DNA of 64,000 nucleotides, from positions 19,158,001 through 19,222,000 of the forward strand of contig NC_135767.1 in the NCBI RefSeq assembly GCF_052425735.1, given 5' to 3'. The position numbers were made by a program, and so were the translations under genes. The notes under the pieces were generated by a model. That model was not told the DNA's origin and made no database searches. It was given only the letters and a program-made list of their open reading frames with translations. The DNA comes from Oculina patagonica (Eukaryota). Positions 2,811 to 42,425 of this stretch are shown one piece after another (positions within the stretch are counted from its first letter, which is position 1; each line of letters opens with the position of its first letter).

Positions 2811-5592
2811 ATGCAAAACTTCAAAATGTTTTTCCACATTGGTTTCACTTTGCTTTGTTTCTCAAGCAGTTTCCTAACAGCAAGGTAATACAATTACGGC
2901 TTTTTTGAACAGATATTCAGTAGTGTTGTTTTCTCGGTTGAAAACAATCGATCCCACGTGATGGTTTGATAGCTCTTGTTCGTTCTGTAGTTCAAATTTT
3001 TGGTTTGCTTCGGCAGAATGGACGTATGAATTTTTTCGTATAGAAAGCGCGAGACAAAACATATATGAATTGCCGATTTCCAATCAATTATGTAATAGTT
3101 CATGATATCAGATTTTCGTAAACATGACGGCTTCCGTGCGTGTCTAGCTAGTAGCTGTTATAATTAGAGGTAAATGTTATCCTGCATATCCTGACAATAC
3201 AAAAAATGTCAAGAAATGTTTTAAAGCGTTAAAAAGCTAGATAGCGTTATTGTTATGCACTTATATTTTCTTTTGGCGGGATAAGGTGGAGGGGGGTGGA
3301 GGTGTTTCAAGCAATGACATATCGAGAAATAGTTCAGAGTGGGAGCCATGTTGCACGTTGTATTTCCTCTGAAAAGGGCGATAAAACAGGGAGCGCGAGG
3401 CATTTGGGAATGCGGCGAAACGCAAACAGTCCCAGAACTCAACGGGCACCGCGTACCGCGAGGAGCAACGCCTGGGGATGAGTCAGCCCCAGGGCAGCCC
3501 TGTTATCGAAAAGATTACATGATAAGAACCAAACATTATGAAGTAAAAGCCAAAAAGTACTGATCAGTTAAGATTGTCATGAACAGCTGAGACACTCCAA
3601 CAGTGTAATCGTGTCATTTTTTTTTTTTTTTTCTATTTTTTCTAGTGGGCAGGTTAAGAGTAGATTGAAGGTGCTGGAAACGGACGCAAACGGAAATCTT
3701 TATCTTCACAAGACTCCACTGCTATGTGTGAGCGACATTATCAAACGACTGACTGAAGGAACTTACAGACTAGCTGAACCAAGCATTTTAGGTATGTATC
3801 ATGTGAGAACATTTGTATAATGAAGAGATGGAAAATATGAACGAAAATAAAATAAGCGAGGCTGCCAATACGTAAACGGCATGATAGAGCACAAAAAAAA
3901 GCCAAAATGCAACCATGGACAGCTAGCTGTCTCGACCTGGCTAGGTCTCGTCAGCGTGGTGTAGCAGCTTAAGAGTAGAAGGTCAGTTGTCTTGTAAATA
4001 GCACATGGTGATGACCTCAGGTGAGCTCACATTCAAATGTCTGCCAGCTGGACAATTAGCCATGTTCTAAACGAGCAGGGGACTGGGTACGAACATATTT
4101 TTTCTTGGTACGAATATTCAATATCGATTGAATTGAAAATGGGGCACGTCATCTGAAAGAGCATCCAAGAATTATTAAATTTACCGAATTTGATGGTTAT
4201 TGGTTTAAACGCAAAGGCATGGTACACTTTTAAAATAAGAGAGCTTAGTATGGATTGGAGGACGCCTGTCCCTCCAATCCATACTGAGTATACCATGCCT
4301 TTGGGTTTAAACCAATAACCGTCAAATTTGGTGAATTTACTAATTTTTGGATGTTCTTTCAGATGACATGCCTCATTTTTCAATTCAATCGATATTGAAT
4401 GTTTGTACCGAAGAGAAAATATGTTCGTGCCCAGTCCCCTGCTCGTTTAGAACATGGCTAATTGCAACGTCAACAGAGCATGTCTATTGAACAATAGGCA
4501 AAACATTGAAAATTGTGCCAATGTTGCGATAAGGAAGATCTACTAAGCCATTGCTGATTAAATCTTTCACAGATCCTACGTATGCAGCATCTTAATTGGC
4601 AGTCCTTTAATTTGGCACATCGGTTCAAACTAGGAACGAACGAACGAACGAACGAAAGAACGAAAGAACGAAAGAAAAAACGAGCGAATAGTTTAAGTAG
4701 CGGTGTATCCAGCATACAATGTAACATTAAATTTTCCGTATTTTATAGAGTTATTGAGAAAAAACGAATCAAAACAAAAGTAGACACAAGCAGTAGCAAG
4801 GGTTCCCACGGCTGTTTCTAGTTGCCCAAATCTATTACGAGGAAATACTTTCTATGGTTAGATCTGTGAACAACTACTGAAATAGAAATCCTTACAGGTA
4901 TTAACTTTTCTAGTCTAACCTTGTTACGTTGGACTACAGGGCTATCCAAAGAATTCGCAGTGAAGAACTGTCAGGACCTGAAGCTTATTAAAGTACCATC
5001 GGTCCAATCAGGCGTCTATTGGATTGATCCTGATGGTGGTTCCCATGGTAACGCATTCCAGACCTACTGTGACCAACAGACTGACGGCGGGGGCTGGACA
5101 TTAGTTTGGAGTTACACCTTCACTGCTTACTCGAGTTTCACGAGTGGAGCAAACGCTGTCACCCCGCGTCCAAGCTGGTCAGCCAGTGGAGCTAATACTC
5201 GAGTGTCTACAACAGTTCCACTGAGTGAGACGCATTACGAGGCCATGAACTTTGCTTTGTGGCGCACCATTGGTAAGGAAACCCTGATCAAGAGCAACAT
5301 CAACAACTGGATCGCATGCAAGGAAGGCACTGGCAGCATAGTGCAACATAAGGCAGGGTCAATCACTTGTAAACTTGTTAAACAGGTTTCTAACCAGTGT
5401 GCTGGTGTAGTGCCAAACTATTGGGGATTAGTCAGCTACGGACCGTACACTGGCTTTTCAGGGAGTGAAGTATACTATTTTTTTAATGGTAACGAGGGTA
5501 GTAATTGGCCTATGCATGATCCATGTGGAAAAGCCCAAGCAAATCAGTTAAAAGGTGTGGCTAATCCCCACGGAAATATTTTTGTTCGCTAA
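2811..5592 (+). CDS. Array copy 1: secreted protein with fibrinogen-like (YCDxxxxGGGW) module, 290 aa
   Basis: Exons 2811-2884, 3646-3791, 4940-5592. All introns are GT-AG, phases 2 and 1, total 873 nt open. Hydrophobic N-terminus MQNFKMFFHIGFTLLCFSSSFLTAS; motif SGVYWIDPDGG..YCDQQTDGGGWTLV; ends NPHGNIFVR. Confidence 0.9.
4053..4464. mobile_element. Palindromic MITE in intron 2 of copy 1
   Basis: caattagccatgttctaaacgagcagggg... and ...cccctgctcgtttagaacatggctaattg form long inverted arms with a short spacer. Confidence 0.85.
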
Positions 5593-39871: not shown

Positions 39872-42425
39872 ATGGTTTTCCACATTGGCATCGCTTTAAT
39901 TTTGTCTTGCTTCTCAAGCAGTTTCTTGACAGCATGCAGGTAAGACAAAGCTTACTTGTTTTAAATTCTTTGTTAACATTATCGGTGATTTCTCATTCAA
40001 AAACATCAAAAACAATTCGATCCAACGTGATGGCTTGCTCACTGATATATAGTGGTTCCTCTAGTTTCGAATTTGTTCGTCCTTTAGTTGAAATCTGATT
40101 TTGGTTGGTCTCGACAGAACGGACGTGTAAATGATTTTCGTAGAGAAAATGTGAGACAAAATGCATACATATATGAATTGAAGACTTTTAATCATGATCG
40201 TATCACAAATAGTTCATGTTTTACACATAATTCATAGCATAAGATTTCGTAAATCTGACAGCTTCCAGCTTCGATGATTAGTACATCTAATCTGCATAGC
40301 CGAGACAATCCTCAAAATGTCAAAAAGACGTTCTTATAAGCATTAAAATAATTATATTTTTATATTTCCTTTTTTTGCAACATTACCCCTGACCTTTTGA
40401 CTTTGATGTATTGTGGGGTACAGGGGAGACGGGGGGGGGGGGGGGGCGGGTGCTGGGGCAATGACGATTTGCAATATTTGTGGGAAATTTTGCTTCTGAA
40501 AGCCAAGAAAATATTACTAAAAAACATCATCTTAGCCAGGAAAAACTTAATTGCGTCAACTTTCGAGATATGCTTTGCACGTTTTATTTCCTCGCTAAAT
40601 GGCTGAAGCGCGGGGCTTGTGGGAAGGAGGCGACACGTGAACAGTCCCAGAACTCAATGCGCACCGCGTACGACTAAAGAGAGGCGCCTGGGAATGAGTG
40701 CCCCTNNNNNNNNNNNNNNNNNNNNNNNNNNNNNNNNNNNNNNNNNNNNNNNNNNNNNNNNNNNNNNNNNNNNNNNNNNNNNNNNNNNNNNNNNNNNNNN
40801 NNNNNNNNNNNNNNNNNNNNNNNNNNNNNNNNNNNNNNNNNNNNNNNNNNNNNNNNNNNNNNNNNNNNNNNNNNNNAATGTTTAGCTGAGGGGAAAAGTC
40901 CCCTCTACTAATTGTGGACACCTGACTAAGAAAAAACTTATGAATGATTCGAATAAAATATTATGAAGTGAAAGCTGACAATAACTAAGCAATTTAGACG
41001 TTCATGATTAATTAAGACTTTCAAATAACACAGTCATGTCACCTTTTTTCTCTAACAATAGTGGGCTCGATCAGCCAAGATACAAGGTGCTGGAAATGGC
41101 CGCGAACGGAACTCTTTATCTTCACAAGACTTCACTGCTATGCGTGAGCGAGGTAATCAAGCGTCTGACTGAAGGAACATACAAACTGGCTGAGCCGAGC
41201 ATTTTAGGTAACACAGTCCATCAATCCAGCATACCATGCGACAATAAACAAACTATTCCAAAAGACAAATTAACTAACGTCGTTTTGGGTTGTTCGCTCA
41301 TTTATTTGCGAAATTCATTGAGATCTATTATCAGCTCGATGGTTATTTATTTATTTATTTATTTTCTTAAAATGTCTGATATACAACTAATTTAATCTAC
41401 TAATTATACATTTCAGTGTTCAGACCAGAATTTGATAACCTCAACTTGTGCTCGCCATAATTCAAATACACATGACCTTTGTTTCTCTAAAAGCGAGACA
41501 TTGATGTAAACATTAAGCTGACGTTATAAAGCTTTTTTATTATTATTTTCCTTAAATTTGCCTCAGTTTTATTGTTTTCAGGTAAAAAAAAAAACAAACA
41601 AACAAAACAAAAGTAGACGTTAAGAAATGACGTAAAAAATTAAACGGAACACTGTAAACAACTTCTGAAATATTATATCGAGCCCAAAGTATCACTCACT
41701 ATTATCAACGACGGATTAAGAAAGTAGTGACTCCTATTAACTTTTCTGTTCTAATCTCACGGAACTACGTTGTACTAACAGGCTTGTCCAAAGATTTCCC
41801 AGCGTCCAACTGTCAGGACCTCAAGCTCAAAGTGCCTTCAGTTCAATCAGGCGTCTTCTGGATTGATCCAGACGGTGGTTCCCATGGTAACGCATTCCAG
41901 GTTTACTGCGACCAACAGACGGACGGAGGGGGCTGGACATTAGTTTGGAGTTACACCTTCACAGCTTACTCAAGTTTCAACAGTGGAGCAAACGCCGTCA
42001 CCCCGCGTCCAACATGGACAACCAGTGGAGCTAACACTCGAGTGTCTACAACAGTTCCACTGAGTGAGACGCATTACGAGGCCATGGACTTTGCTTTGTG
42101 GCCCACCATTGGCAAGGAATTCCTGATCAAGAGCAACATCAACAACTGGATCGCATGTAAGGAAGGCACTGGCAGCATTGTACAACAGAAGGCGGGGTCA
42201 ATCACTTGTAAACTGGTTAAACAGGTTTCTGAGCAATGTGCTGGTGTAGTGCCAAGCTCATTGAGATTAGACAGCTACGGACCGATTATTTCAGCGAGTT
42301 CTTTATACTATTATTTTGACGGCAATGCGGGTAGTAATTTTCCTACCCATGATCCATGTGGAAAAAATCAAGCAAATCAGTTAAAAGGTGCGGCTAATCC
42401 ACACGGAAATATTTTTGTGCGTTAA
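39872..42425 (+). CDS. Array copy 6, 285 aa
   Basis: Exons 39872-39939, 41062-41207, 41782-42425; 858 nt open; GT-AG. Intron 1 spans the N gap. Confidence 0.85.
40706..40876. other. Assembly gap (171 N)
   Basis: Run of N. Confidence 1.

What the first reader, a model, noticed from the sequence alone, without database searches (positions are those of the whole stretch)
2811..42425. Tandem array of secreted fibrinogen-module proteins with one CDR-like hypervariable patch: candidate diversified recognition system
Seen: six paralogues share a nearly invariant framework, but every one differs between 'C.G..P' and 'P.HDPC'. Copy 1 NYWGLVSYGPYTGFSGSEVYYFFNGNEGSNW (5416-5508); copy 2 NFVWPSSHGQGLGNNGTDYFFDGSTEKDTNYYKAAW (10301-10408); copy 3 NLLSIHSYGPSISASDNYYYFDGNIGDNS (16507-16593); copy 4 KSLVLYTYGPYLSSSSLYYYFDSSTSANM (23751-23837); copy 5 KSLKMYGNGPSLDDSSHFYYFDSHTSSSW (37882-37968); copy 6 SSLRLDSYGPIISASSLYYYFDGNAGSNF (42255-42341). 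Anchors (GP, Y.F[DN]) are mostly kept and length changes are in frame. Two smaller variable spots flank NAVTPRP (SSFTSG/SNFNSK/SSFNTG and SASGAN/KISSAN/TTSGAN). Known: the YCDxxxxGGGW module opens fibrinogen-related domains of ficolins, FREPs and intelectins, whose ligand sites lie in the C-terminal part; Tyr/Ser-rich surfaces are typical of binding paratopes. After GGGWTLV the sequence (WSYTFT..NAVTPRP..HDPCG..NPHGNIFVR) matches no named family I recognise. Inference: a secreted pattern-recognition, allorecognition or symbiont-binding repertoire under diversifying selection.
Basis: partly seen in the sequence, partly recalled or inferred. Interest (0 to 1): 0.88.

Follow-up and report, generated by a model that had tools for sequence, protein, structure and literature searches.

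The report
Coral fibrinogen-like gene array, variable loop
This is a real tandem array of coral genes for secreted fibrinogen-like binding proteins that share a conserved scaffold and differ in one loop region, but the loop looks like old divergence evolving at about the neutral rate, not a proven antibody-like diversification system.

Summary
In detail: all six patch translations are exact, and the same positions vary across about 125 coral relatives.

- **Source and genes:** the window is Oculina patagonica. It carries six three-exon genes: a signal-peptide exon, a 50-residue exon, and a 215-residue domain exon.
- **Intactness:** only copies 1, 4 and 6 look intact. Copy 2 is a pseudogene, copy 5 has a 7-nt frameshift in exon 2, and copy 3 has lost 21 codons of exon 2.
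- **Assembly gap:** it lies inside intron 1 of copy 6 and touches no coding sequence.
- **Fold:** the whole exon-3 domain is a divergent fibrinogen-related domain (AlphaFold2 pLDDT above 90; Z about 10 to intelectin, tenascin and ficolin).
- **Sequence kin:** only the first 46 residues match named models. The rest is 44-45% identical to sea-anemone and to myxobacterial proteins, patch consensus included.
- **Selection:** patch dN/dS is 0.72 in 16 sister pairs and 1.1 at cross-validated variable sites. Two recent duplicate pairs show 21 nonsynonymous to 1 synonymous change (p = 0.045).
- **Silent sites:** patch and head are near saturation (0.62-0.64) and introns do not align, yet the core is only 0.18 diverged. 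The scaffold is being homogenised.

Diversifying selection is possible but not shown, and function is untested. The scan had already noted the core homogenisation on this window.

The parts
1146..1219 (+). Extra signal-peptide exon, used as the alternative first exon of copy 1 (isoform X1)
   Evidence: 100% match to residues 1-24 of P0116; GT donor follows it
2811..5592 (+). Copy 1, intact. Exons 2811-2884, 3646-3791, 4937-5592; patch 5416-5508
   Evidence: Exon 3 is 100% identical to P0116, an O. patagonica LOC144629140 product. Splice sites; patch
8536..10480 (+). Copy 2, pseudogene. Exons 8536-8597, 9343-9494, 10008-10480; patch 10301-10408. Lacks 61 framework codons and the C-terminal strand
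   Evidence: A detached C-terminal fragment lies at 11160-11201
15151..16677 (+). Copy 3. Exons 15151-15224, 15740-15816 (only 77 nt: in-frame loss of 21 codons, including the conserved Cys), 16031-16677; patch 16507-16593
22426..23921 (+). Copy 4, intact. Exons 22426-22481, 22906-23051, 23275-23921; patch 23751-23837
   Evidence: Contigs of run X1 join 22477 to 22902 across a GT..AG intron and cover the patch with 3 changes
35776..38052 (+). Copy 5. Exons 35776-35849, 36555-36693 (139 nt: a 7-nt deletion causing a frameshift), 37409-38052; patch 37882-37968
39872..42425 (+). Copy 6, coding sequence intact. Exons 39872-39939, 41062-41207, 41779-42425; patch 42255-42341
40706..40876 (.). Assembly gap inside intron 1 of copy 6
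   Evidence: The flanking exons are at 39872-39939 and 41062-41207

Best explanation
The window holds part of a larger Oculina patagonica tandem array of three-exon genes for small secreted proteins of about 280-290 residues.

Each protein has three parts. Exon 1 encodes a signal peptide. Exon 2 encodes a 50-residue segment with one free Cys, which may serve oligomerisation (inferred). Exon 3 encodes one globular domain.

The globular domain is a divergent fibrinogen-related domain of the 'YCDxxxxGGGW' type. This type is found across Anthozoa and in bacterial multidomain carbohydrate-binding proteins.

The variable patch is a short three-strand meander plus a loop between two conserved Cys (227 and 269 in copy 1). 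By strand order it lies in the equivalent of the ligand-binding P subdomain.

The most likely function is extracellular binding, lectin-like, with each paralogue tuned by its patch (inferred, not tested).

The sequence pattern has an evolutionary explanation. The copies are old duplicates. Strong purifying selection, together with gene conversion between copies, keeps the scaffold alike even at silent sites. The first 23 codons of exon 3 and the patch keep their old divergence and evolve at roughly the neutral rate.
For: - **Gene models and secretion:**
- **Transcription and splicing of copy 4:**
- **Fold:** AlphaFold2 pLDDT is above 90 over residues 71-290. Only fibrinogen-related domains match, with Z 9-10 over 160-190 residues spanning the whole domain.
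- **Sequence models:** NF040941 scores 65-74 bits against a cut-off of 30. Pfam models cover only the first 45 or so residues.
- **Relatives:** more than 1000 close coral relatives. Nematostella, Actinia and an octocoral carry it at about 45% identity. A Myxococcales protein is 44% identical over 208 residues without a gap.
- **Evolution:** dN/dS is 0.17 in the core and 0.72 in the patch.
- **Silent sites:** in the window, core divergence is 0.18 against 0.64 in the head and 0.62 in the patch. Between species the core reaches 0.22-0.50.
- **Heterogeneity:** silent-site heterogeneity within single gene pairs gives p = 1e-4 to 7e-6. Introns do not align.
Against: - No ligand, expression pattern or oligomeric state is known.
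- A Sawyer-type run test finds only weak conversion tracts (p 0.02-0.08 in four of ten pairs). Homogenisation is therefore inferred from silent-site contrasts, not from clear tracts.
- Only three of the six copies are intact.
- Two recent duplicate pairs show 21 nonsynonymous to 1 synonymous change in the patch, which points toward positive selection rather than neutrality.
Confidence: 0.6

Rival explanations
1. A true diversified recognition repertoire. Selection for different binding specificities (immune, symbiont or allorecognition) drives amino-acid change in the patch and protects it from the conversion that homogenises the scaffold.
For: - Two recent duplicate pairs from long-read assemblies have 21 nonsynonymous to 1 synonymous change in the patch, against 12 to 22 in the core. 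The binomial test against neutrality gives p = 0.045.
- The same positions vary in every coral sampled.
- The patch is Ser/Tyr-rich.
- By strand order, the patch lies in the P-subdomain equivalent.
Against: - Patch-wide dN/dS is 0.72, and cross-validated variable sites give 1.1 with an interval that spans 1.
- Patch nonsynonymous rate against the pooled silent rate in the recent pairs is 1.5, with p = 0.086.
- The patch consensus is shared with a bacterial homologue.
- There are no polymorphism or expression data.
- Half of the copies in the window are damaged.
Confidence: 0.25
2. The patch is only a tolerant surface loop. The family has one shared function, for example an extracellular matrix or structural role, and the loop drifts neutrally.
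For: - Omega is close to 1 at variable sites.
- Old, saturated divergence.
- The scaffold is very strongly conserved (core omega 0.17).
Against: - Anchor residues and length are kept.
- The variable positions recur across species and paralogues.
- There are hundreds of paralogues per family.
- In related folds this subdomain carries the binding site (established knowledge on ficolins and tachylectin-5A, not tested here).
Confidence: 0.12
3. A mutational mechanism acts on the patch, either local hypermutation or exchange of patch cassettes between copies.
For: - Metagenome contigs L009 and L006 differ at 4 of about 1680 nt up to the patch, and then at 22 of 120 nt in it.
- Contigs in three runs match both flanks of the copy 4 patch but not the patch itself.
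Against: - Several short-read contig pairs share a 100% identical intron and head and then diverge. This is the signature of assembler chimeras across the conserved core, so the mosaics are not trustworthy.
- In recent duplicates from long-read assemblies, patch silent divergence (1 change in 35 sites) is not above that of the core (22 in 185).
- No exact donor was found.
Confidence: 0.03

Closest known systems
Canonical fibrinogen-related domain lectins (ficolins, tachylectin-5A, FIBCD1, tenascin and angiopoietin FBG domains)
   Same: - They share the N-terminal Cys...YCD...GGGW module.
- The overall fold matches over the whole domain (Z 9-10).
- They are also secreted.
- The variable region falls in the C-terminal subdomain, which binds ligand in those proteins.
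   Different: - After the first 45 or so residues there is no detectable sequence similarity, even with a 74-sequence profile.
- The P-subdomain equivalent is shorter, about 60 residues.
- The Ca2+ and acetyl-pocket residues could not be aligned.
- TM-scores are below 0.5.
Bacterial 'fibrinogen-like YCDxxxxGGGW domain' proteins (NCBIfam NF040941), e.g. Myxococcales Laminin_G_3 + domain + CBM_4_9 proteins
   Same: - The whole 200-residue domain aligns at 38-45% identity without gaps, including the WPTHDPCG motif and the patch consensus.
   Different: - The bacterial proteins are large multidomain proteins, not small secreted single-domain ones.
- They form separate clades from the cnidarian proteins in a midpoint-rooted tree.
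- The NCBIfam model covers only the first 46 residues.
Intelectins / X-type lectins
   Same: - They give the best sequence and fold hits in the PDB (4wmq, 7e1e).
- They are secreted, oligomeric microbial-glycan binders.
   Different: - Sequence similarity ends after about 60 residues.
- Intelectins are about 100 residues longer, with extra loops that carry the Ca2+ and diol site.
- None of that could be matched here.
Expanded invertebrate FREP/FBN families (snail FREPs, mosquito FBNs, oyster and amphioxus FReD genes)
   Same: - They are large, tandemly arrayed families of secreted fibrinogen-type proteins whose members differ mostly in the binding subdomain (my own knowledge; snail FREP diversity is discussed in PMC2935394).
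   Different: - Those proteins carry canonical PF00147 domains, and snail FREPs add IgSF domains and somatic diversification.
- Here the domain is the divergent GGGWT type.
- No somatic variation was tested.
Fibrillar collagen C-propeptide (COLFI, PF01410)
   Same: - The Pfam hit is above the cut-off (38-48 bits) over profile positions 25-70.
- Relatives are automatically named 'collagen alpha chain-like'.
   Different: - Only the shared N-terminal module matches.
- There is no Gly-X-Y triple helix upstream.
- This is not a collagen.

Membership tests
Fibrinogen-related domain superfamily | N-terminal A-subdomain module with a Cys pair and YCD....GGGW | tested here: met
   PF00147 scores 23.5-25.7 bits against a cut-off of 22, over profile positions 4-46. 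PDB sequence hits go to intelectin, ficolin and fibrinogen
Fibrinogen-related domain superfamily | Full-length match to the Fibrinogen_C profile (221 positions) | tested here: not met
   Only positions 4-46 of 221 align. A 74-sequence profile also stops at about residue 74
Fibrinogen-related domain superfamily | Whole-domain fold (A, B and P subdomains) | tested here: met
   AlphaFold2 pLDDT is above 90. VIA-align gives Z 9-10 with 160-190 aligned residues, model 70-290 against whole FBG domains, and 117 chains at Z 8 or more among Foldseek's candidates; all 50 rows shown are fibrinogen-type domains. Foldseek TM is only 0.3-0.46
Fibrinogen-related domain superfamily | Ca2+ site and acetyl-group (S1) pocket residues in the P subdomain | not testable with these tools
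   No residue-level structural alignment or model coordinates were available
NCBIfam NF040941 GGGWT_bact | Score above the curated cut-off for the 46-residue module | tested here: met
   64.7-73.5 bits against a cut-off of 30 for the coral proteins, and 67-68 bits for the bacterial proteins scanned in the same call
Fibrillar collagen (COLFI) | C-propeptide preceded by a Gly-X-Y triple helix, with a full COLFI match | tested here: not met
   COLFI matches only positions 25-70 of 233. Exons 1-2 encode a signal peptide and a 50-residue non-collagenous segment
Intelectin / X-type lectin | Similarity beyond the fibrinogen-like module, including the intelectin-specific Ca2+ and diol-binding region | tested here: not met
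   Sequence alignment ends at query residue 65 or so. The fold match is no better than to ficolin or tenascin
Diversified recognition gene families (under diversifying selection) | dN/dS above 1 at the variable sites | tested here: inconclusive
   Patch 0.72; cross-validated variable sites 1.1, interval 0.78-1.57; recent duplicates 21 N to 1 S, p = 0.045
Diversified recognition gene families (under diversifying selection) | Excess allelic polymorphism or somatic variation in the patch | not tested
   The one read-laying run used assembled contigs of mixed paralogues. Short-read contigs proved chimera-prone

The most novel reading that the evidence does not exclude
Corals keep a germline repertoire of secreted binding proteins built on a bacterial-type fibrinogen-like domain. 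Gene conversion keeps the scaffold uniform, while selection for different specificities keeps the disulfide-bracketed patch diverse. This would be an innate recognition system for microbes, symbionts or non-self, organised like MHC or KIR gene clusters.
Probability: 0.2. Interest if true: 0.8.

Novelty: new variant of a known kind. Interest (0 to 1): 0.5.

Why it matters
Corals depend on telling symbionts, pathogens and neighbours apart, yet few of their secreted recognition molecules are known. This family has three features that make it worth pursuing:

- It has hundreds of copies across stony corals and is conserved across Anthozoa.
- It is unnamed and unstudied in the papers I could search.
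- It is built on a fibrinogen-like domain whose nearest sequence relatives include bacterial carbohydrate-binding proteins.

If the variable patch sets ligand specificity, the family would be a tractable set of natural binding variants on one rigid scaffold. If not, it is still a clear example of a scaffold kept uniform at silent sites while two short segments keep old divergence.

Tried and rejected
- **Ancestral-state counting:** iqtree2 does not offer ancestral sequences on this machine. I did no ancestral reconstruction and used independent sister pairs instead.
- **Mosaic alleles:** L009 against L006 looked like a striking patch-only difference. I rejected it as evidence after finding contig pairs with a 100% identical intron and head that then diverge. 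These are probably assembler chimeras.
- **USOMP-5 / coral egg-protein lead:** papers report fibrinogen-related subdomains in USOMP-5 homologues (PMC6824150, PMC4890752). However, the Swiss-Prot fold search listed only canonical fibrinogen-type proteins and no coral matrix protein among its 30 best matches, so I found no support for kinship.
- **Recent horizontal transfer from bacteria:** bacterial and cnidarian sequences form separate clades, so only an old relationship can be claimed. The direction is unknown.
- **NCBI gene models of other corals:** these are not on record in the look-up of encoding contigs. No DNA from named complex-clade corals could be compared.
- **Literature searches:** searches for the family, its locus names and the NCBIfam name found nothing.
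- **Conversion tracts:** the Sawyer-type test gave only weak signals.
- **Surface mapping:** the three variable spots could not be mapped onto one surface, because model coordinates are not exposed.
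Full report
**Observation**

The six quoted patch peptides translate exactly at the stated coordinates. Six open last exons on the + strand carry them. When aligned, five share a near-invariant 214-217-residue framework. They differ in four places:
- the first 23 codons (the "head");
- two small spots flanking NAVTPRP;
- the 29-31-residue patch;
- four residues after HDPCG.

The same columns carry the entropy in 125 family members from many corals. Fixed anchors inside the patch (G, P, L, YYYFD, P) show that it varies around a consensus.

**Source and gene structure**

Exon 3 of copy 1 is 100% identical to an Oculina patagonica product, P0116, of LOC144629140. All six copies are three-exon genes:
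- Exon 1 encodes a hydrophobic signal peptide.
- Exon 2 is 146 nt and encodes a 50-residue segment with one Cys.
- Exon 3 encodes the domain, entered through an 'acag|G' phase-1 acceptor.

State of each copy:
- **Copies 1, 4 and 6** are intact.
- **Copy 2** lacks 61 framework codons and the C-terminal strand, of which a piece lies at 11160-11201. It is a pseudogene.
- **Copy 5** has a 7-nt deletion in exon 2, causing a frameshift.
- **Copy 3** has an in-frame loss of 21 exon-2 codons, including the Cys.

An extra signal-peptide exon at 1146-1219 is used by isoform X1 of copy 1.

The N gap (40706-40876) lies in intron 1 of copy 6, between exon 1 (39872-39939) and exon 2 (41062-41207). No coding sequence or reading frame crosses it. 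Continuity across it cannot be verified here.

Contigs of a public run (X1, probably RNA) join 22477 to 22902 across the GT..AG intron 1 of copy 4. They also cover its patch with three changes.

**What the protein is**

By sequence, only the first 45 or so residues of exon 3 match named models:
- COLFI and Fibrinogen_C in Pfam;
- the 46-residue NCBIfam model NF040941, 'fibrinogen-like YCDxxxxGGGW domain', at 65-74 bits against a cut-off of 30;
- intelectin, collagen NC1 and ficolin chains in the PDB.

A 74-sequence profile reaches no further.

By fold, the result is different. An AlphaFold2 model made with that alignment has pLDDT above 90 over residues 71-290. It matches only fibrinogen-related domains, over the whole domain. 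Foldseek gives E about 1e-5. VIA-align gives Z 9-10 with 160-190 aligned residues against intelectin-1, tenascin, ficolins and FIBCD1. The whole exon is therefore a divergent fibrinogen-related domain.

The patch (residues 233-263 of copy 1) is predicted as three short strands plus a loop. It sits between the conserved Cys227 and Cys269 and before the final strand. By strand order this is the P-subdomain equivalent. Whether it is exposed, and whether the three variable spots meet on one surface, I could not test without coordinates.

**Relatives**

- More than 1000 proteins at 74-86% identity come from stony corals of both major clades, and all are uncharacterised.
- An exhaustive search gave 3581 hits, 144 of them below E 1e-30.
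- Full-domain relatives at 40-53% identity occur in Nematostella, Actinia, an octocoral and Pocillopora. Some carry PAN or TSP1 domains upstream.
- Bacterial multidomain proteins also carry the full domain (Laminin_G_3 + domain + CBM_4_9; Myxococcales and Deltaproteobacteria MAGs).
- Copy 6 is 44% identical to one such bacterial protein over 208 residues without a gap. In the patch segment the match rises to 24 of 36 residues.
- In a midpoint-rooted tree the bacterial and cnidarian sequences form separate clades. The stony-coral family is a tight, short-branched clade.

The patch consensus is therefore ancient, and 'CDR-like' overstates its freedom.

**Selection**

- **Window pairs:** among the five intact exon-3 copies, core dS is 0.16-0.28 with omega about 0.2. 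Patch dN is 0.30-0.62, with dS from 0.26 to saturated, and omega is below 1 in 9 of 10 pairs.
- **Sister pairs:** I added 38 intact exon-3 sequences from coral metagenome contigs and chose 16 independent sister pairs from a tree. Omega was 0.17 in the core, 0.24 in the head, 0.72 in the patch, and 0.57-0.75 in the small spots.
- **Cross-validated sites:** sites chosen as variable in half of the pairs and scored in the other half gave omega 1.1, interval 0.78-1.57.
- **Recent duplicates:** in long-read assemblies from other corals, two recent duplicate pairs show 21 nonsynonymous to 1 synonymous change in the patch, against 12 to 22 in the core. The binomial test against neutrality gives p = 0.045. 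Patch nonsynonymous rate against the pooled silent rate is 1.5, p = 0.086.

The patch evolves at about the neutral rate, perhaps faster just after duplication. Positive selection is not established.

**Silent sites**

- Introns and 3' flanks of the window copies do not align, at about 25-35% identity.
- Silent divergence within the window is 0.64 in the head and 0.62 in the patch, but 0.18 in the core.
- Between long-read arrays of different corals, the core reaches 0.22-0.50.
- Within single gene pairs, the silent-site contrast between patch or head and core is significant, with p from 4e-4 to 7e-6.
- Array-specific residues are shared by paralogues in each genome.

The core is the outlier. 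The simplest reading is old duplicates whose scaffold is homogenised by conversion on top of purifying selection. A run test finds only weak tracts, so this remains an inference.

Local hypermutation is not supported. In the recent duplicates, patch silent change (1 in 35 sites) is not above that of the core (22 in 185).

**A caution**

Short-read metagenome contigs gave striking mosaics. L009 and L006 differ at 4 of about 1680 nt up to the patch and then at 22 of 120 nt in it. But other contig pairs share a 100% identical intron and head and then diverge. This is what assembler switches across the conserved core would produce, so I do not count these mosaics as evidence. The 'skips' of 82-89 nt at the copy 4 patch in three runs are contigs of other copies or species that match both flanks. 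They are not splicing.

**Verdict**

The protein is a secreted, divergent fibrinogen-related domain of an uncharacterised anthozoan family with bacterial kin. I found no description of it in the searchable literature.

It survives only as a minority possibility, on the strength of the recent-duplicate signal.

Noticed in passing
window 1146-1219: An orphan signal-peptide exon 1.6 kb upstream of copy 1's own first exon. It is identical to the N-terminus of isoform X1 (P0116). It may be a relic of a lost copy, now used as an alternative first exon.
   Followed up: partly
window 11160-11201: A detached fragment encoding the family's C-terminal strand lies about 700 nt downstream of the truncated exon 3 of copy 2. 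This suggests an insertion split that exon.
   Followed up: no
window 12848-12921 (-) and 19215-19288 (-): Two tRNA matches above the Rfam gathering score (50.9 and 45.1 bits) lie between the array genes. Whether they are genes or tRNA-derived repeats was not checked.
   Followed up: no
window 25666-25783 (-) and 26040-26156 (+): A divergent pair of 5S rRNA matches (46 and 41 bits) is flanked by 63-nt tandem repeats at 24913-25051 and 26738-26879. This fits the foldback element noted earlier by the scan.
   Followed up: partly
window 62641-62939: An 18-nt tandem repeat with 16.5 copies lies inside an ORF (62571-63062) that encodes a Thr/Lys/His-rich repeat.
   Followed up: no
L010/L025, L004/L016, L031/L035, L018/L053: Pairs of short-read metagenome contigs have a 98-100% identical intron and an identical exon-3 head, then diverge in the core, patch and tail. 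These are probably assembler chimeras between paralogues, and a warning for any family analysis based on such contigs.
   Followed up: partly
L068 17899-18894 (-) and L071 18248-19006 (-): A 7tm_1 receptor gene lies about 7-8 kb downstream of a family member in two different coral assemblies. This may be a conserved neighbour of the array.
   Followed up: no
P0165, P0157, P0164, P0193, P0198: Bacterial Laminin_G_3 / CBM_4_9 proteins carry the same 200-residue domain at 38-45% identity to the coral proteins. That is as close as the sea-anemone homologues are. The history of the domain between bacteria and cnidarians is open.
   Followed up: partly
L002, L021, L024, L038, L043, L045: Six of the full-length exon-3 matches in coral metagenome contigs contain stop codons or N. 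Pseudogenes may therefore be common in the family.
   Followed up: no
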